Shown here piece after piece: positions 32,373 to 42,268 of a DNA stretch of 42,268 nucleotides. A program made the translations under genes and the position numbers. The stretch is from Basidiobolus meristosporus CBS 931.73. Its lineage: Eukaryota > Fungi > Basidiobolomycota. Within the stretch, counting starts at the first letter, position 1. Each line of letters opens with the position of its first letter. Under the pieces are notes generated by a model. That model was given only the letters and a program-made list of their open reading frames with translations. It made no database searches and was not told where the DNA came from. The stretch spans positions 1 to 42,268 of the forward strand of contig MCFE01000719.1 of the NCBI GenBank assembly GCA_002104905.1, read 5' to 3'.

Positions 32373-34061
32373 CTAACGTTCACCCTTTGCGTATCGCTTC
32401 AATAGATCATAGTTCCCTTCAATTGTTCTCTTGGCGCCCCTCCATTTCCCTGGCCCAACCAAGCGGAAGTTCGCTGGCCATCTTGGAGCAAAGAACGATT
32501 TCCACGCAAGTTTGACGCTTCCATATTCCTTCAGAATAGCCCATAAGGATGGATAAAATCCACACTGAGAGGCTAAATCATTCAAGTAATTTTGATTCGG
32601 TTCCCATATGACGCGTTGAGTTGAAGGTAGCCGCTTTCGCTTGTCCTCCAAGTATTGTGAGATGTTAGAGCGCGGTGGAAGTGATATAGTACCAGTCCAC
32701 AGTGAGGTGATATACCTATTCTGGATATCACTACGGAAGGGTCAGTGTAATCAAGAGAACAGTAGTTAAAATTCATCATTACCTCACATTGAAAGCGGAA
32801 TCTAGTAATTTTCTCAGTTAAATCCAGTATAGCACAGAGGAATATGTGAGATCTTACCCAAGGTGAACACAAATCCAACGAATGCTATGCTGGGATAATC
32901 CGGGGGAAGCATTCCTTGGTATAGCCAGAGTGGCCCACTCTCGCAAGAGCTTTTATGTCGAGGTTGACCACCAAGGATATATTTTTCAATGTCAGTCTCT
33001 GTAAAGAAAGGAAAATCCAATTTGAATCCAGTGGCCAAAATAATTGCATCAACGTCAGACACGACATCGCCATTGGTGAATTCAATGGATCTTCCGTCAT
33101 TCAAGAAGCGCTTTACACCAGGCATCGTAAGAACATGACCAGAGGCTAATCTTTCAAGAAGGTTGCCACTAGCTGCCGGAGGCTTCTCTAAGAATGATAT
33201 TTTCTTGCTTGGATTAAGCCAGCCGGTTGGTGGCACCAACAAATAGTTTGTAATTATGAAATCACTGAGCCATGTAGGGGCTATTGCAGAAAGAAACCGG
33301 TAGTGCATCAAATCCAGGGGGAGTCCGCTGCTGGTTAATCGAGGAAGTATGAAAGTCCCGCTTCGAGAAGATATAATTACCTCCTCTGCCGTGTGAGATA
33401 ATTCGTTGGCAATATCACACCCGCTTGTCCCTGAGCCAATTACAACCACACGTTTGCCTAGAAATTTTGAAGGTTCGTGATAGTCCAAAGAATGAATGAT
33501 CTCGCCACAGAAGTTCTCCATGCCTTCATACCTAACCATGTTTGAATGATAATTGTGCCCAGTAGCTACAATAACATGGTCGAAAATCTCATCAACAGGC
33601 ACGGGATCATTCAAGGCTGTATTCAAATATTTCAACAGCCATTGTCCATTCTCCAAGCGGACGACGTTGACAATTTTATGTTGCAAACGCACACTGTCCA
33701 TGAGGTTGAAATCCTTCGCGTAGCTCTCAATGTATTTGCATACGTATTTTTGAGGAAGATATTGAGGCCACGTAGAGGGGAAAGGGTAGTCAGGGAATGG
33801 AGACATATCTCGACTCAGGATAAAAACTATCCCTTTGTACATCGGAGTAGGCCCACCATTATACCCCTTGTAGTGCCACAAGCCACCAATCCAGGGATTT
33901 TGTTCAAAACAAACCGGGGTCAAACGTCCATTAGTTTCCAGGCAGGCCTTTACCGCGTTTAACCCACCTATTCCTAATCATACTATTATTTCAATGGACA
34001 ACTTTACGGAGTTCAAGCCGACTATACCTGCACCGATAATAGCTACGCGTTTACTAGTCAT
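32373..34061 (-). CDS. Flavin-containing monooxygenase (class B FMO), ~508 aa, 4 exons (34061-34028, 33973-32858, 32801-32783, 32730-32373)
   Basis: FAD motif GAGIGG (across intron 1), FE....GGLW, FMO fingerprint FCGEIIHSLDY, NADPH motif VVVIGSGTSG, ATGF, and S..Q.RY..LW.G...LP. Introns 54/56/52 nt. A further 3' exon cannot be excluded. Confidence 0.92.
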
Positions 34062-35923: not shown

Positions 35924-36534
35924 TAGGGGGAGGGAAAGTCACCAAGGTAGGTGAAATCTTTATTTGATTGCAGACAAGTCTAACTACAAATAAAGAAGCC
36001 AGCTGGGAATAGAAGATTCCCAAAGTAAACACTAAGTTGAATATGAATAAATCTAAGCTAAAGTTAAGGCAGTATCCCAGAGTACACTGGAGTTCAGGTT
36101 CATGGGGGAGTAAGTAGATAAGCTTGAGAGATATAATAATCTTTGAGGAAGTGGGTAACAGCAGGTGAAGGGGAGTTTTTGATAAGAGAAGTGAATCTTG
36201 AGAGCAGAGATTCCTCTAAGGAGAAGGTCTTGTAAACTGGAGAATCAGGAAACTCTTTAAAGGCATGGTCAGTAGGTTCCCAGTAAAACTGGTCAGAGAC
36301 ATTTTGAGAGAACTCTTTAACAATACTTTTGTCAAGTACTACCTCCAGAGTGTGATGGTTGATAAATCTCATGTTAACAAACTTGGATAAATTGTAACCT
36401 TGTTGCTTGAGATACATCCTATGGTCAGATATAGGAATAAACTCCACATTGGCAAAGTAGCAGACAGCCCAGTCAGTAGCAGGAGGCAAACCAGAAGTGG
36501 CAGGAAACTTTCTTTTAGTCTTGGGAAGAGCAGC
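35924..36534 (-). mobile_element. Array unit C: ORF1-only non-LTR element (5'-truncated)
   Basis: 144-codon open frame (36534-36100) whose C-terminus aligns with the ORF1 end of unit A, then ~130 nt of UTR and the shared tail. No ORF2 trace. Confidence 0.75.
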
Positions 36535-36546
36535 AGTTAGGGGGGG

Positions 36547-38711
36547 GAGACAGTCACCAACAGGTGAAATCTTTATTTCAGTTGAAACAAAGAAGCCAGC
36601 ACTACTGTTGTAGCTTTGATACAAGAGTGTGTAGCTGAGGGGAATTTGTAGGTAAGTTAATAAGAAGTGATGATAGTTCTTCAGTGCTCAAGACACTGTT
36701 CAGTGGGAAGGGGGGTAGCAAGAGAGGTAAGAATGACTTGTGAACAACATTAATGAGGGGAATGTGATAAGGATTGATATTCATCATAAAGGGAGTGTGC
36801 TGCTGCAGATATTGCTGCCAAAGGTCTGTCAAGTACTTCAGGTAGGCCAGCTTGGGTTTTTCTGACTGCAGAATATAGTGAGCAAACTTCTTGACTTCAG
36901 GATCTCCAAGTATAGTTCTCCAGCAGGAGTCAGGTGTAGTGTGGTGTGTTCTCTTCCATACCTTAATCAGTGGGTTGTTGCAGTTGTGAAGTCTGAGGTA
37001 TAATATGGTTCTAAGGTAGAGAAGTCTGATCTTATAGGGCATAAACCCAAAAGCACCAAGAATAGCATGTCTGTAGGGGCATTCAGGCAAATGAGGCACC
37101 AAGGAGGTAATGCACCATACTGCAAACTTGTCAAGCTTAGTGCAGTCTCTAGAAGTAAGAGAGAGAAGTGGTAAGCCAAATTCCAGGACAGGGAAGACAA
37201 ACTGCTTGAGTAGAAGAAGGCAGCTGGGAGCTGAAGTTGTAGGAGGAGTAACAGTCAGTAGCTTGTGGAGTGCCTGTCTTGCCAGGATAATTCTCTTCTT
37301 CAGGTGTGCTCCAGAGTCTAGTCCAGTAGGAAGGAAAGGAAAGCCAAGATATGTAGCTGAGACCTGAGCAGGTAGAGTGGAGTTCTCCAAGTTGATGGGA
37401 GAGCCCAAAGGTACTGTCTTTGCAATAGAAAGCTGGAGATTATTCTTCTGCAGATACTGGTGGATGGTCTGGGAGTCTTGTTGCACATTGGAGGAGGATA
37501 TTCTGATGTCATCAGCAAAGAGAGTAACCAGGCAGTCAGCTGAGAGTCTTGGGAAATCATTCAGGAAGATGGCAAACAGTATAGGACCAAGCACAGAGCC
37601 TTGAACCACTCCATTAGGAACTGAGAACACAGCTGATTGCTCACTTGGGTGCAGAATTCTTGCTTGTGGATCCAGAAACAGAGACCTGACAAGGAGGGTG
37701 AGAGAGGTACTGGAGAAGCATTGCAACTTGGACCAAAGCAGATTTCTGTCAACTGAATCAAAGGCCTTAGTAATATCAAACAGAACAGAGGGATACTTGC
37801 ACTGGAGAGAGTGATCTTGGCTAAGTATGACTGCATATTCCAAGGAGAGGCCAGGAACAAAGCCACACTGTGCAGGATGAAACTTGAGGGAGTCAGAGTA
37901 GAGCTCCTGAGCAAGCAGAAGCTCAAACACCTTTCTGCAGGTGGGCAGCAGAGATATTGGCCTGTAGGAGCTAGGATCCAGGTGCTTTCCTTTACCCTTG
38001 TACAGTGGCAGAACATTTGCAAAGGACCATTCCTCAGGAGTAGAAAGCTGGGCTGAGCATTGCTGAAACAGTGGAAGCAGAAGTGCAGACATGGCCTTGG
38101 TACTAGTCTTCAGAAGCTCATAAGAGATTGTGTCCACACCTGGAGCAGTAGAGTTGGGAAGCCTCTTGAGCACATTATGGATTCTCCTTTGATCAAGTGC
38201 AAGTGGGATGGGCAGAGTCTTGAAGTCAGGATGAAAGCCAGGAGTTGAGTACTGCTTTGTAGAGAAGAAGATGTTAGCCAGCTGTTCTGTTGAAGGTAAC
38301 TTCCTGGAAGAGGGCCTCATTGCCCTGTAGAGTCTTGATACTGTTCTTGTTATAGAGTTGGAAGATTGCAGAGGCAAAGAACTCATAATATGATCCCAGA
38401 GCTGAGTATGCAGAGTGTGGTGAATTGCCTTGGAGTGGTGTATTGCTGTCAGGAGGAGTTTCTCTGTTTTTGGGTTAGGGAAACTCAGGTAGCTTTGTTG
38501 CAGGGCTGAAACAATGGATTCCCATTTTCTTGAGGTAACAGCAGTAGTCTTGCATGGTAGTGAGAGGGAGGCAGACACCAGAATCAGATGCTTCACAAAG
38601 AGCCAGGCATAGTTGAGATCATCTGGCAGAGAAAGTAGCAAACTGGCAAGCTTCAAGTAGTTCCCAAAGTCTTTCTTCTGATGCTTGGTAGCTTTGTGGG
38701 TGAGCACAGTA
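36547..38711 (-). mobile_element. Array unit B: 5'-truncated LINE with an intact 701-aa RT ORF (36602-38707)
   Basis: RT motifs PGVDTI, YRPISLL, FDITKAFDSVDR, GVVQGSVLGP, FADDI, YLG. Begins just after the endonuclease region. Flanked by 12-bp AGTTAGGGGGGG at 36535-36546 and 38712-38723. Confidence 0.93.
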
Positions 38712-38723
38712 AGTTAGGGGGGG

Positions 38724-39136
38724 AGGAAAGTCACCAAGTGGTGATATCTTTATTTACTTATGACAAGTATCTAAAGAGGCCAAGTTAATCTGAAGTAATT
38801 CCTAGAAAGCTAGGTCTGAGAGATATCTTCCTGGTAAGCCAGGTCTGAGAGTTGAGAAGCTGAGTGGTACTATATTTCCTAGTTAGCAAGGTCTGAGAGA
38901 GGTTTCCTGGAAAGCCAGGCCTGAGAAGTGAGAATCTGAATATATCTGAGCTAAGTTATACTGGTTTGCAGTAGCTGAATTGTGGCCGGAATGGCCAGTA
39001 GACTGGGGAACTGAGATGAATTTCTGGGCGATCACTGGCCAAATTTACTAGGCAAATCTGGCCAATTAGCATTTCAAGGATTTCAGCCAATCAGAGCCTT
39101 TACTTTGCCGATGGTTGATCAAGCCATCTCCCAATG
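38724..39136 (-). mobile_element. Array unit S: ~410-bp non-coding SINE-like element with the LINE tail
   Basis: No ORF or LINE-coding homology. Ends in AATAAAGATATCACCACTTGGTGACTTTCC. Contains four 20-bp palindromic repeats. Confidence 0.65.
38801..38925. repeat. Four imperfect 20-bp units CCTRG-N4-CYAGGTCTGAG arranged as a duplicated dimer
   Basis: Units start at 38801, 38830, 38878 and 38906, each preceded by TT. Confidence 0.85.
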
Positions 39137-39228
39137 AGGGTTAGGGGAGGGAAAGTCACCAAGTTGGTGAAATCTTTATTTGAGTTAAGAACTAATCTAG
39201 GTACAAATAAAGAAGCCAATTAAGAGGT

Positions 39229-42078
39229 CTAGAACCTCTCTAATAAATAATCTAATTTATGTTTTGTTTTATCTCTAATGTTTGTTTCAATAAAGTAAAG
39301 CTCATCAGGGGTAAATATAAAATTCAGGGGTTTTGGGGGAAGTACAAATTGTAGATGTTTCTGATCAATATAATCCAAGACTGGAACCCAGCCTGGGATT
39401 AGGTGTAGTAGGAAAGGTGTGTGGACTTGTAAGTAGCTCTGCCACATAGATCTTAGATGGTCCTGAGCCAGTAGTCTTGGTTTCTCAGCTTTTTGAAGTT
39501 TTGAAGCAAGCTCTGTTACTACAGCAGAGCCAACCAGGGTGTGCCAGCAAGAAGATTTCAGGGAGGAGTTAGATTGAAGCCATTGTTTGATGGAGGGGTT
39601 ATGTGATTTCTGAAGTTTGACTAGGAAGGAAGCACGGAGATAGACCATTCGGATTTGGTATGGGTAGAAGCCAAAGGCTCCATTAGTTGCATGGATATAG
39701 GGAGATACTGGAAGATAAGGTACCAAGGATCTGATACACTGATGGAGAAATTTATCCAGGCGGTGAAGTTCTCTGGAGGTTAGGGGTATAATGTGGAGAC
39801 CAAACTCAAGTACCGGCAGTACATACTGCTTCAGAAGTATAGGGATCTTTTGAATTGGAGTGTCAGGAGTGACTACTACCAGAAGCTTTTTGAGAGCCTG
39901 TTGAGCAAGACGGATCCTATTATTCAGGTGGAGCTTTGAGTCAATCCCATGTTGACAAAATGGCAGACCTAGATATATTGCAGTTTGTTGTGGCAGAATG
40001 CTAGTGTTCTGTATAGTTGTAGTGCATCCAATTGGGACTGTCTTGGAAATTGAGAGTGAGAGGTTGTTGGCAGCCAAGTACTTCTCAATGATGGCAGTGT
40101 CTGCTATGGGATTAGGAGTAGCAATCTTGATATCATCCGCATAGAGAGTTAGTAGTGGATAGGGAGAGTCTGGTGAGGGGCCTTTTGGAAATAAAGGAAA
40201 GTCATGTAGGAATATCACAAATAGTAAGGGACCTAGTACAGATCCTTGGACTACTCCATTTGGAACCTCATAAGTCTCTGATGTACAACTTGGATGCAAA
40301 ATTTTGGCTGAGTTCTCACAAAATAGAGAACGTACAAGAAGGGTCATTGGTAGTGTGGTAACTGCTAATAGCTTTCTCCAAAGCAGAGCTCTGTCCACAG
40401 AGTCAAAGGCTTTAGTAATGTCAAACAGAATGGTTGGCAATGAGAATTGAAGTGAATGATCATGGCTTAGCACTACAGCCATATCCAAGGAGAGTTTGGG
40501 CAAGAAGCCAAACTGAGAAGGATGGAATGGATATAGTTGAGATTGCAAGGATCTTGCAATTATAAGCTCAAAGATTTTCCGGCAGGTTGGCAGGAGTGAA
40601 ACTGGCCGGTAAGAACCTGGGAGTGAGTGTTTCCCCTTCCCTTTGTATAAGGGTATTACATTTGCCTGTGACCAGGCCTTTGGGGTAGTCAATTGTTGGG
40701 CACAGATAGAGTAGAATGGGAGAAGTAAGTGACTCATTTTGGAGTAGCACACCCGGAGTAGATCGTAGGTAATCAAGTCATGTCCAGGTGCAGTATTTGC
40801 AGGAAGCTTCTTTAAAATTTTCTCCAGAAGCTTTGCTGAAACCAAAATTGGAGATGTTGGACTGCTAGATATGTTACCAGTATGGTAGAAAGGAGGAGTG
40901 GGATGCACGGTTGAATCAAAGAATATAGGGGCCAGTTTGTCTGGTGATGGTATACTCCTTGCTTGGGGTCTCATGGCTTTATATACTCTTGATATGGACC
41001 TTGTGGTGGCATTCATATTTACTAAGGGCAAGGTATCCATGATATGAGCCCATAATCTAGTATGCTCAGTGATCTGTAGTGACTTGGAGTAGGAGATTGC
41101 GCTTTCCAGGAGGTTCTGTGTTTTTGGGTTAGGGAAACATAGGTAGCTGGAATTTAAGGCAGAAATGATGGATTTCCATTTAAGTTGGTTTGCAGATGGC
41201 TTTTGGTAGGACTTGGTGGGCAGGGCCAGACAGCCAGTGATTATGATGAAATGCTGGTAAAATAGCCATAATGCATTTATATCATCACAAATCCATGCAG
41301 GTAAGCTGGGAAATGCATATTCTGTAAGCAAGGATAGGTAGTTGGCAAAGTCCTGTGTCTGTGATACTGAAGCTTTGGCTGGCAGGATTGTAAATGGCTG
41401 AAGAAGGGTGCCAATTGGTAGGGTTTTTCTGGCAGAAATGATAATATGTATTGGCTTGTGATCAGATTTCTCTAGTGAACCACAGCTGATATCCTCTGGA
41501 ATGCTTGTAACCTGGTGGATGTATTGTAAGGCAGCTGGAGTAGCTGTTACCCAGTCAACACAACGTTGAGCTTGCTGAGTGTTTACAGTGACCAGATGGT
41601 TTTGTCGGAGGAACTTTGTAAAGTGCTCCTCTCTAGTTCTAAGTCTGGATGAAATAGTGGTGATATTTTCAGGGTGGGGAATATTTGTATCTCCCACTAC
41701 CATACAAGGGATTGATGAGCTGTTAATGAATTCTGATGTGGCCAAGAAAATTGCCAGTGTTATGGAGTTAGACAGAGATGGAGGGAGATAGATAATAATG
41801 GCTACTATAGTTGGAAGTGTTAGAGCATAGCAGTAATACTCATAGATGATGGATACATTTGCTGAGGGTGCAAGCTTAGAAGATGAAAGAGCAACAAGTG
41901 CCATTGAGTGAGCTGGAAATCTTGGGTGAGCAGATGAATATGCATTCAGTCTAGAGGGAAGTTTTGGCAACTTAACATCAATTAGTAGGAGCAAGGAATA
42001 TTCCTTTTTCAGTAAGTTTTCTAATTCAGCTACAGTTGGAGTGATGGAGTTGCAATTGAGTAAGAGTATGTTTTGTAG
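39229..42078 (-). CDS. Array unit A ORF2: APE endonuclease + reverse transcriptase (949 codons from the upstream stop; no N-terminal ATG)
   Basis: APE motifs LNCNS, YLPP, GDTN, VDW, SDH. RT motifs PGHD, YRPVSLL, FDITKAFDSVDR, GVVQGSVLGP, YADDI, YLG. Uninterrupted frame with no obvious RNase H or CCHC tail. Confidence 0.95.
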   Translation of the reverse strand, partial: LQNILLLNCNSITPTVAELENLLKKEYSLLLLIDVKLPKLPSRLNAYSSAHPRFPAHSMALVALSSSKLAPSANVSIIYEYYCYALTLPTIVAIIIYLPPSLSNSITLAIFLATSEFINSSSIPCMVVGDTNIPHPENITTISSRLRTREEHFTKFLRQNHLVTVNTQQAQRCVDWVTATPAALQYIHQVTSIPEDISCGSLEKSDHKPIHIIISARKTLPIGTLLQPFTILPAKASVSQTQDFANYLSLLTEYAFPSLPAWICDDINALWLFYQHFIIITGCLALPTKSYQKPSANQLKWKSIISALNSSYLCFPNPKTQNLLESAISYSKSLQITEHTRLWAHIMDTLPLVNMNATTRSISRVYKAMRPQARSIPSPDKLAPIFFDSTVHPTPPFYHTGNISSSPTSPILVSAKLLEKILKKLPANTAPGHDLITYDLLRVCYSKMSHLLLPFYSICAQQLTTPKAWSQANVIPLYKGKGKHSLPGSYRPVSLLPTCRKIFELIIARSLQSQLYPFHPSQFGFLPKLSLDMAVVLSHDHSLQFSLPTILFDITKAFDSVDRALLWRKLLAVTTLPMTLLVRSLFCENSAKILHPSCTSETYEVPNGVVQGSVLGPLLFVIFLHDFPLFPKGPSPDSPYPLLTLYADDIKIATPNPIADTAIIEKYLAANNLSLSISKTVPIGCTTTIQNTSILPQQTAIYLGLPFCQHGIDSKLHLNNRIRLAQQALKKLLVVVTPDTPIQKIPILLKQYVLPVLEFGLHIIPLTSRELHRLDKFLHQCIRSLVPYLPVSPYIHATNGAFGFYPYQIRMVYLRASFLVKLQKSHNPSIKQWLQSNSSLKSSCWHTLVGSAVVTELASKLQKAEKPRLLAQDHLRSMWQSYLQVHTPFLLHLIPGWVPVLDYIDQKHLQFVLPPKPLNFIFTPDELYFIETNIRDKTKHKLDYLLERF

Positions 42079-42267
42079 TCAGGCAGACTCTGAGGTTGCC
42101 TGTTCCTGCTGAAACTCTTGCACTGCCCTTTGTAAATTTCCAGAATTATTCCACAACTCTTCAAATGGAGCTTGTGTAATGTCTTTCAGGATTCTAATTG
42201 CTTCCTCTTTCAAGAAGTAGGCCACATCATAGGTTGGAGCCTGTTTCTTAATGGCAGCAAAGAAAGC
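42079..42267 (-). CDS. Array unit A ORF1, C-terminal 62 aa (partial, continues beyond window)
   Basis: Open frame AFFAAIKKQAPTYDVAYFLKE...ATSESA ending in TGA, in frame with ORF2 and homologous to the unit C ORF. Confidence 0.75.
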   Translation of the reverse strand, partial: AFFAAIKKQAPTYDVAYFLKEEAIRILKDITQAPFEELWNNSGNLQRAVQEFQQEQATSESA

Positions 42268-42268
42268 C

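What the first reader, a model, noticed from the sequence alone, without database searches (positions are those of the whole stretch)
33920..34027. FMO intron 1 looks like a tandem duplicate of the following exon: a candidate intron gain by AG|GT duplication
Seen: the 54-nt intron (34027-33974) aligns without gaps to the first 54 nt of exon 2 (33973-33920) at 32/54 identities (26 of the first 39), exactly one intron length apart. Read in frame it gives G-I-V-G-L-N-S-V-K-L-S-I-E versus exon G-I-G-G-L-N-A-V-K-A-C-L-E, and half of the 20 mismatches before the terminal AG are at third codon positions. Exon 1 ends GCAG|GT. Established: tandem duplication of coding DNA containing AGGT is a proposed but rarely documented route to new spliceosomal introns. 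Inference: this intron arose that way and still shows its origin.
Basis: partly seen in the sequence, partly recalled or inferred. Interest (0 to 1): 0.75.

Follow-up and report, generated by a model that had tools for sequence, protein, structure and literature searches.

The report
Ancient intron rebuilt from adjacent exon
The first intron of a Basidiobolus flavin-monooxygenase gene really is a decayed copy of the coding sequence next to it, but fungi from four phyla have an intron at exactly this spot, so an old intron site was refilled or re-created by a small local duplication rather than a new intron being born.

Summary
The 54-nt intron (34027-33974, minus strand) matches the next 54 nt of exon 2 at 32/54 positions without gaps. 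No shuffle and no other place in the window reaches that. The window is a scaffold of Basidiobolus meristosporus and the gene is a canonical FMO.

An intron sits at the same nucleotide and phase, inside the second Gly codon of GxGxxG, in an 80% paralog and in B. ranarum. It is also there in Endogone, Geosiphon, Ambispora, Fimicolochytrium and Kockovaella. The position is therefore ancient in fungi and is not a new gain.

Only the Basidiobolus introns resemble their exon: strongly in the window, weakly in the paralog and B. ranarum. The two B. meristosporus introns are homologous and share derived changes, so the copying predates their split (dS about 1.8). It probably dates to the Basidiobolus stem, where this gene also lost five or six ancestral introns.

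My best reading is that the old intron was lost and then re-created at the vacated AG|GT by tandem duplication (about 0.4). The main rival is that the old intron was kept and overwritten by an exon copy (about 0.35).

The public gene model uses an acceptor 6 nt further on, which breaks GxGxxG.

The parts
34028..34061 (-). Exon 1 of the FMO gene: ATG at 34061-34059, 34 nt, ends GCAG. It encodes MTSKRVAIIGA plus the first base of the second Gly codon of GxGxxG.
   Evidence: 100% match to database protein P0001
33974..34027 (-). Removing it gives GAGIGGL with an intact GxGxxG, and a 508-aa product, the same length as the paralog.
   Evidence: same junction in the paralog, in B. ranarum and in five other fungi
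33983..34027 (-). Exon-derived part of the intron, intron positions 1-45. It is a decayed copy of the first 45-46 nt of exon 2.
   Evidence: 28/45 ungapped, about 31/45 with one 1-nt gap
33974..33982 (-). Intron tail TATGATTAG with the 3' splice site. It has no detectable source and is nearly identical in the paralog (TATGACTAG).
33985..33988 (-). Likely branch-point core TAAT, 11-12 nt before the 3' AG. It lines up with the exon's CTAAT (Thr-Asn codons). The paralog has TTAAC and B. ranarum has TACTAAC at the same distance from the 5' end.
   Evidence: inferred; no experimental mapping
33928..33973 (-). Source segment: the start of exon 2, encoding (G)IGGLNAVKACLETNG, which is the FAD-binding GxGxxG helix.
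33968..33969 (-). Second in-frame AG, 6 nt downstream. The public gene model uses it as acceptor (60-nt intron 34027-33968). That deletes Ile-Gly and destroys GxGxxG.
   Evidence: P0001 reads ...IIGAGGLNAV
32858..33973 (-). Exon 2 (1116 nt), a fusion of what are six exons in related fungi. It carries FxGxxxHxxxY (FCGEIIHSLDY) and the second GxGxxG (GSGTSG).
32802..32857 (-). Intron 2 (56 nt), found only in the Basidiobolus genes.
32783..32801 (-). 19-nt micro-exon, conserved in all three Basidiobolus genes.
32731..32782 (-). Intron 3 (52 nt, phase 2 before ...DIQNRY). It sits at the same position as an intron in Geosiphon and Ambispora.
32373..32730 (-). Last exon including the stop codon.

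Best explanation
The gene is a vertically inherited fungal flavin-containing monooxygenase. Its first intron occupies an ancient fungal intron position, phase 1 inside the second Gly codon of GxGxxG. The intron's present sequence is not the ancient one. Its first 45 nt or so are a decayed tandem copy of the first 45 nt of exon 2. That copy was made by a local duplication of roughly 54-68 nt in the Basidiobolus lineage. The event predates the split of the two B. meristosporus paralogs and probably also the split from B. ranarum.

The most likely path has two steps. First, the old intron was precisely lost, plausibly in the same cDNA-mediated event that removed the next five ancestral introns and fused them into today's exon 2. 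Second, a tandem duplication across the vacated AG|GT junction (the Gly codon GGT) re-created an intron at the same site. The GT came from the Gly codon. A ready-made branch-point-like ACTAAT came from the Thr-Asn codons. Splicing out the upstream copy restored the reading frame.

Shown here: the similarity and its register, the ancient position, the homology of the paralog introns with their shared derived changes, and the loss of neighbouring introns. Inferred: the loss-then-regain order, the branch point, and which acceptor is used.
For: Similarity and register: 32/54, reached by no shuffle and no other site. Collapsing the repeat gives an uninterrupted GAGIGGL reading.

Ancient position: the junction is identical in the paralog and B. 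ranarum and in Kockovaella, Endogone, Geosiphon, Fimicolochytrium and Ambispora. The Basidiobolus genes are sister to Endogone inside a fungal clade. A sea cucumber FMO lacks the intron.

Exon likeness is specific to Basidiobolus. The five other GxG introns have empirical tails of 0.13-0.51, and the best of 47 control introns is 0.026. B. ranarum scores 0.006-0.009, the paralog 0.024, and the window below 0.0003.

Age: the window and paralog introns are homologous in their interiors (p=0.0006). They show 10 shared derived columns against 3 window-only and 9 paralog-only. Paralog dS is 1.84 and four-fold site identity is 47%.

Plausibility of the loss step: Basidiobolus keeps only 2 of the roughly 8 intron positions seen in its relatives.

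Weak 5' splice sites (GTATAG in B. meristosporus, GTCTAT in B. ranarum, against GTAAG/GTATG in the six other introns) fit a coding-sequence origin.

The mechanism has been shown to work in ATP2A1 (PMC3265369). Protosplice sites of the form (A/C)AG||Gt are reviewed in PMC3488318.
Against: No intron-less intermediate was seen, since all three available Basidiobolus genes have the intron. Simple retention of the position is the more parsimonious reading.

The duplication model predicts that the intron's tail should resemble the 3' end of exon 1. It does not (4/9; local alignment p=0.68-0.99).

The signals in the paralog and in B. ranarum are weak (p about 0.01-0.03, with several lengths tried).

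If the event predates the B. ranarum split, the window intron is better preserved than neutral decay predicts. My rough estimate gives about 0.45-0.5 expected identity against 0.59-0.67 observed, p about 0.02-0.05.

There are no transcript data. The public model uses a different acceptor.
Confidence: 0.4

Rival explanations
1. The ancient intron was never lost. A duplication of the intron's 3' end plus the start of exon 2 (as in the potato RdRp case), or a template-switching repair, placed an exon copy inside the intron. The old intron body was then deleted in register. The short repeats shared by the two junctions (AG|GTATA and AG|GAATA) may have guided the deletion, and so may the likeness of the exon's ACTAAT to a branch point. 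On this reading intron content turned over and there was no gain.
For: The position is continuously present in every sampled intron-bearing relative, including the sister Endogone. Endogone's intron also starts GTATA and its exon 2 starts GAATT, so microhomology between the junctions may be old. The intron tail has no likeness to exon 1 and could be the old 3' end. Similarity stops near the branch point. The potato case shows that duplications spanning an intron-exon border happen and reuse parental signals (PMC4974935).
Against: It needs the exon copy to begin exactly at intron base 1. That requires either a roughly 1-in-50 coincidence or a microhomology-guided second event. No long intermediate intron was seen. 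The weak, coding-like 5' splice sites are not what a retained ancient intron would be expected to have.
Confidence: 0.35
2. One reading: a new intron position created by AG|GT duplication in this gene lineage, with the introns at the same site in other fungi being independent parallel gains.
For: The register and the AG|GT junction fit. The site is a textbook protosplice site inside a conserved Gly codon. Parallel gains do occur, estimated at about 5-10% of shared positions (PMC3488318).
Against: Five further lineages in four phyla share the exact position and phase. Four of the five (not Kockovaella) also share several other intron positions with each other. The sister Endogone has the intron. 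So many independent gains at one site is not credible.
Confidence: 0.03
3. The likeness is maintained or produced by selection, for example an intronic splicing or regulatory element that must resemble the exon, or repeated conversion between the two copies. On this reading it is not a historical relic.
For: The window intron is better preserved than a neutral estimate predicts if the event is as old as the B. ranarum split. Its lineage shows 3 private changes against 9 in the paralog.
Against: The paralog and B. ranarum introns have largely lost the likeness. Window-paralog identity over the first 39 intron bases (19/39) equals that of four-fold sites (47%), which indicates neutral drift. The 3-versus-9 contrast is not significant. 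The copy has an in-frame stop.
Confidence: 0.05
4. Chance resemblance between an ordinary intron and its exon.
Against: 0 of 200,000 shuffles reach it. It is the only hit in 42 kb at any offset from 40 to 300. It lies 5.5 sd above the window mean, and 0 of 4,477 gene positions reach it.
Confidence: 0.01

Closest known systems
Vertebrate ATP2A1 intron created by segmental duplication across AGGT (Hellsten et al. 2011, PMC3265369)
   Same: The intron is phase 1 inside a conserved Gly codon at AG|GT. The duplicated coding sequence supplies the donor, the acceptor and a branch-point-like motif, and the protein is unchanged after splicing.
   Different: In ATP2A1 the outgroups and paralogs lack the intron, so that is a clean gain, and no sequence likeness survives. 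Here the likeness survives but the position is ancient and occupied in all intron-bearing relatives.
Potato RdRp intron gained by tandem duplication of intron 3' end plus exon 5' end (Ma et al. 2016, PMC4974935)
   Same: A small tandem duplication at an intron-exon border with an identifiable source sequence. It is a model for my main rival explanation.
   Different: The potato event added an extra intron and is recent, with clear presence/absence among close relatives. Here the number of introns is unchanged and the copy starts at intron base 1.
Fission-yeast introns spanning tandem 24-bp AGGT-containing exonic repeats (Zhu & Niu 2013, as cited in PMC4974935)
   Same: A fungal case of short exonic tandem repeats being spliced as a short intron.
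   Different: Those are multi-copy, near-identical recent repeats at new positions. This is a single old copy at an ancient position.
Parallel intron gain at protosplice sites (reviewed in Rogozin et al. 2012, PMC3488318)
   Same: If the old intron was lost and re-made, this would be a re-insertion at an (A/C)AG||Gt site inside a conserved GGN codon.
   Different: Parallel gain has been inferred statistically from shared positions. Here there would be a visible source sequence for the second gain.

Membership tests
Intron created by tandem duplication of AGGT-containing coding DNA (Rogers 1989 model) | The intron's 5' part is similar to the downstream exon at an offset equal to intron length | tested here: met
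   32/54 ungapped, unique in the window, 0 of 200,000 shuffles
Intron created by tandem duplication of AGGT-containing coding DNA (Rogers 1989 model) | AG|GT at the donor junction, and collapsing the repeat restores an uninterrupted, conserved reading frame | tested here: met
   GCAG|GT. Removing the 54 nt gives GAGIGGL, as in the paralog and Endogone
Intron created by tandem duplication of AGGT-containing coding DNA (Rogers 1989 model) | The intron's 3' part is similar to the end of the upstream exon | tested here: not met
   4/9 and 8/30 identities; local alignment p=0.68-0.99 in all three genes. The tail is only 9 nt, so power is low.
Intron created by tandem duplication of AGGT-containing coding DNA (Rogers 1989 model) | Phylogeny shows a gain: orthologs and paralogs outside the clade lack an intron at this position | tested here: not met
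   The intron is present at the same position and phase in 5 fungal orthologs from 4 phyla, in the paralog and in B. ranarum. It is absent only from wholly intron-less genes and from an animal FMO.
Intron created by tandem duplication of AGGT-containing coding DNA (Rogers 1989 model) | Transcripts show removal of exactly this segment | not testable with these tools
The public model uses an acceptor 6 nt downstream.
Flavin-containing monooxygenase (Pfam PF00743, FMO-like) | Pfam FMO-like profile match over the whole protein | tested here: met
   Exon 2 gives E=1.9e-65 and the last exon gives E=1.1e-11
Flavin-containing monooxygenase (Pfam PF00743, FMO-like) | N-terminal FAD GxGxxG, the FMO motif FxGxxxHxxxY, and a second (NADPH) GxGxxG | tested here: met
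   GAGIGG (only with the 54-nt intron), FCGEIIHSLDY and GSGTSG are all in the translation. The public 60-nt model loses the first motif.
Horizontally acquired bacterial gene that gained introns (considered because Basidiobolus is known for such transfers) | Closest relatives are bacterial | tested here: not met
   The exhaustive search puts Endogone (43%), Geosiphon, Ambispora, chytrids and animals first. The tree nests the gene in fungi. The bacterial hit P0004 is only 29% identical.

The most novel reading that the evidence does not exclude
An ancient fungal intron was precisely lost in the Basidiobolus lineage and then re-created at the very same protosplice site by a tandem duplication of about 54-68 nt of coding DNA. 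If so, this would be a case of intron re-gain at an old position with the source sequence still visible. It would show directly that a shared intron position need not mean continuous inheritance.
Probability: 0.4. Interest if true: 0.8.

Novelty: new variant of a known kind. Interest (0 to 1): 0.55.

Why it matters
Well-supported cases in which the source of a spliceosomal intron's sequence can still be read are few. This one is unusual because the two standard criteria disagree. The source sequence says the intron is young and made from the exon. The phylogeny says the position is ancient.

If the intron was lost and re-made, this would be a concrete example of parallel gain at a protosplice site. 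That bears on how far shared intron positions can be used to reconstruct ancestral gene structures. If the intron was kept and overwritten, exon-to-intron copying can renew intron content. A recognisable source sequence is then not enough on its own to call an intron gain.

Practically, the public gene model for this protein probably uses the wrong acceptor and lacks two residues of the FAD-binding motif.

Tried and rejected
Acceptor choice is unresolved.

Horizontal transfer from bacteria: I considered it because the word search gave a bacterial metagenome protein as the next hit. I rejected it after the exhaustive search and the tree.

Segmental duplication context: the paralog locus shares nothing with the window beyond the gene itself.

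Intron tail as a copy of the end of exon 1: no signal.

Introns 2 and 3 as duplicates of each other: no signal.

An alternative donor/acceptor pair using the GTAAAG present in both copies would stay in frame. It would delete Val-Lys from the conserved helix, so I did not pursue it.

Earlier scan notes near this place and under the words 'intron gain' or 'duplication' held nothing on this feature.

Searches used exon 2 by reference and database proteins. The joined coding sequence was built only inside local scripts for the codon alignment and dS.

A genome-wide scan of all introns was not possible because only this window was available. The window-wide scan found no second case.

Full report
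**What is there.** The window is an entire 42,268-bp scaffold of Basidiobolus meristosporus CBS 931.73. The database protein P0001 matches it at 100% and names the organism. On the minus strand, from 34061 to 32373, lies a flavin-containing monooxygenase gene. Pfam FMO-like matches exon 2 at E=1.9e-65 and the last exon at E=1.1e-11. The translation shows the FMO motif FCGEIIHSLDY and the second dinucleotide-binding motif GSGTSG.

The gene has three short introns and a 19-nt micro-exon:
- exon 1: 34061-34028
- intron 1: 34027-33974
- exon 2: 33973-32858
- intron 2: 32857-32802
- micro-exon: 32801-32783
- intron 3: 32782-32731
- last exon: 32730-32373

**Checking the observation.** The match is 32/54 ungapped identities between the intron and the next 54 nt, with 26/39 in the first 39. 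Exon 1 ends GCAG|GT. The in-frame peptide likeness is as stated, and 10 of the 20 mismatches before the terminal AG fall at third codon positions.

The match is far beyond chance:
- None of 200,000 shuffles reaches 32.
- At offset 54 the window mean is 14.0 with sd 3.3, and only this site reaches 32.
- Over all offsets from 30 to 300, it is the only tandem pair of 40 nt or more at 59% identity or above.
- None of 4,477 other positions in the three Basidiobolus genes reaches it.

With one 1-nt gap the likeness extends to about intron base 45. The last 9 nt resemble nothing. Read through, the intron has an in-frame stop.

**Relatives within the genus.** A paralog in the same genome, P0002, is 80% identical in protein. 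It has a 57-nt intron at the identical junction. The B. ranarum homolog is 58% identical over the full coding sequence. Its public model is truncated, but the genomic sequence shows the start codon, exon 1 and a 68-nt intron at the same junction. All three introns of the gene are at the same positions in all three genes.

The window and paralog copies are old duplicates. dS is 1.84, and four-fold sites are 47% identical. Against B. ranarum, four-fold sites are near saturation at 31-36%. Nothing outside the gene is shared between the two loci.

**The decisive comparison.** An exhaustive profile-free search with the paralog protein found much closer relatives than the word search had. These are Endogone (43%), Geosiphon, Ambispora, chytrids and animal FMOs. 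I fetched the genes and mapped their introns onto the proteins.

An intron sits after the first base of the second Gly codon of GxGxxG (...IGA[G]xxGL, phase 1) in:
- Endogone (89 nt)
- Geosiphon (90 nt)
- Ambispora (62 nt)
- Fimicolochytrium (75 nt)
- Kockovaella (61 nt)

The first four of these genes also share several other intron positions with one another. Gamsiella and two ascomycete genes are entirely intron-less, so they are uninformative. A sea-cucumber FMO has no intron there.

In a maximum-likelihood tree the three Basidiobolus genes form a clade, (ranarum,(paralog,window)). That clade is sister to Endogone with 100/99 support, inside a fungal FMO clade. The intron position is therefore ancient in fungi.

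**The likeness is nevertheless real and lineage-specific.** I scored every intron of all these genes for in-register identity with its downstream exon, using all other positions of the genes as an empirical null. Tail fractions were:
- the five non-Basidiobolus GxG introns: 0.13-0.51
- the best of 47 control introns: 0.026
- the paralog's intron 1: 0.024 (13/30)
- B. ranarum's intron 1: 0.006-0.009 (20/45, 27/68)
- the window's intron 1: below 0.0003

In B. ranarum the canonical branch point TACTAAC followed by GG lies in register with the exon's ACAAAT GG (the Thr-Asn-Gly codons). The window has TAAT and the paralog TTAAC at the matching place. So the exon's Thr-Asn codons look like the source of the branch point. 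This is an inference.

**Dating.** The interiors of the window and paralog introns are homologous (p=0.0006 with the splice-site ends held fixed). Over 45 aligned columns, 16 are the same in introns and exons. Ten are derived and shared by both introns, 3 are private to the window intron and 9 are private to the paralog intron.

One copying event therefore predates the paralog split by roughly as much time again, or more. That places it at about the age of the B. ranarum split, which fits the weak residual signal there. Over the first 39 bases the two introns are 49% identical, the same as four-fold sites. So the intron drifts neutrally.

If the event is as old as the B. ranarum split, the window intron is a mildly lucky survivor. 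My rough estimate gives about 0.45-0.5 expected identity against 0.59-0.67 observed. Some luck is expected for a case that was picked because it was striking.

**Mechanism.** Because the copy begins at intron base 1, collapsing the repeat removes the intron exactly. That is the signature of a tandem duplication across an intron-less AG|GT (Rogers' model, demonstrated experimentally for ATP2A1 in PMC3265369). With an ancient intron at this position, that requires the old intron to have been lost first.

Loss is plausible here. Basidiobolus retains only two of the roughly eight intron positions of its relatives, and exon 2 is a fusion of six ancestral exons. That is the pattern left by cDNA-mediated intron loss. 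The old junction would have been left as a protosplice site, (A/C)AG||Gt (PMC3488318). The unusually weak, coding-like donor sites GTATAG and GTCTAT fit this. I give this path about 0.4.

The main rival, at about 0.35, keeps the old intron. A duplication spanning the intron-exon border (as in the potato RdRp gene, PMC4974935) or a template switch put an exon copy into the intron. The old body was then deleted in register. The near-identical junction repeats may have helped. Endogone's intron also starts GTATA and its exon 2 starts GAATT. This would explain why the intron's tail resembles neither exon, but it needs an exact-register second event.

The data cannot separate the two. I rate literal new gain with parallel gains elsewhere at about 0.03, selection for likeness at about 0.05, and chance at about 0.01.

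**Splice sites.** The public model P0001 reads ...IIGAGGLNAV. It uses an AG 6 nt further on (60-nt intron, 34027-33968) and loses Ile-Gly from GxGxxG. Its AG is also the first one at a workable distance (11-12 nt) after the putative branch point. By comparison, the other introns of these genes skip AGs lying 1-6 nt after the branch point. I think the 54-nt form is the functional one, but this is inference.

**Verdict.** The intron's sequence did come from the exon by local duplication, but this is an old event at an ancient intron position, not a fresh intron gain. It is a new variant of a known kind and of moderate interest. It would be of high interest if loss and re-gain at the same site can be shown.

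The spliced coding sequence was used only in local scripts for dS.

Noticed in passing
window 33968-34027 (minus strand): The public gene model (P0001, 506 aa) removes 60 nt rather than 54. This deletes Ile-Gly and breaks the FAD-binding GxGxxG. All relatives support the 54-nt form. It is either a likely mis-annotation or a tandem acceptor pair 6 nt apart.
   Followed up: partly
L002:644-742 (B. ranarum contig JASJQH010002361.1): The public B. ranarum protein P0003 starts at an internal Met. The genomic sequence has an upstream ATG at 644, a 31-nt exon 1 and a 68-nt intron (675-742), which add 55 residues including GxGxxG.
   Followed up: yes
window 32783-32857: Intron 2 and the 19-nt micro-exon behind it are shared by all three Basidiobolus genes. 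They have no counterpart in the five other fungal orthologs examined. Intron 2 is a better candidate for a true lineage-specific gain than intron 1. It shows no likeness to intron 3 or to its flanking exons.
   Followed up: partly
window 32858-33973: Exon 2 spans five ancestral intron positions that are still occupied in Endogone, Geosiphon and Ambispora (Fimicolochytrium shares one exactly and has a second a few bases off). This indicates a block loss of introns in the Basidiobolus lineage.
   Followed up: partly
window 36000-42268: There is strong positive GC skew (0.25-0.31) over the last 6 kb. A weak offset-54 repeat signal lies at about 38114-38126 (30-31/54). Earlier scan notes describe an array of non-LTR elements with telomere-like joints here, so the FMO gene may lie close to a chromosome end.
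   Followed up: no
L010:326-364 and L010:2878-2916 (Fimicolochytrium FMO model): Two 39-nt 'introns' in the public model have poor splice-site contexts and look like annotation devices rather than real introns.
   Followed up: no
tree: The window protein's terminal branch (0.17) is twice the paralog's (0.087), although the window intron is the better-preserved copy of the exon.
   Followed up: no
L001:857-3747 and L003/L004: The paralog lies next to alpha/beta-hydrolase and FSH1 serine-hydrolase genes. The distant bacterial FMO hit P0004 also sits next to an alpha/beta-hydrolase. This is probably coincidence.
   Followed up: no
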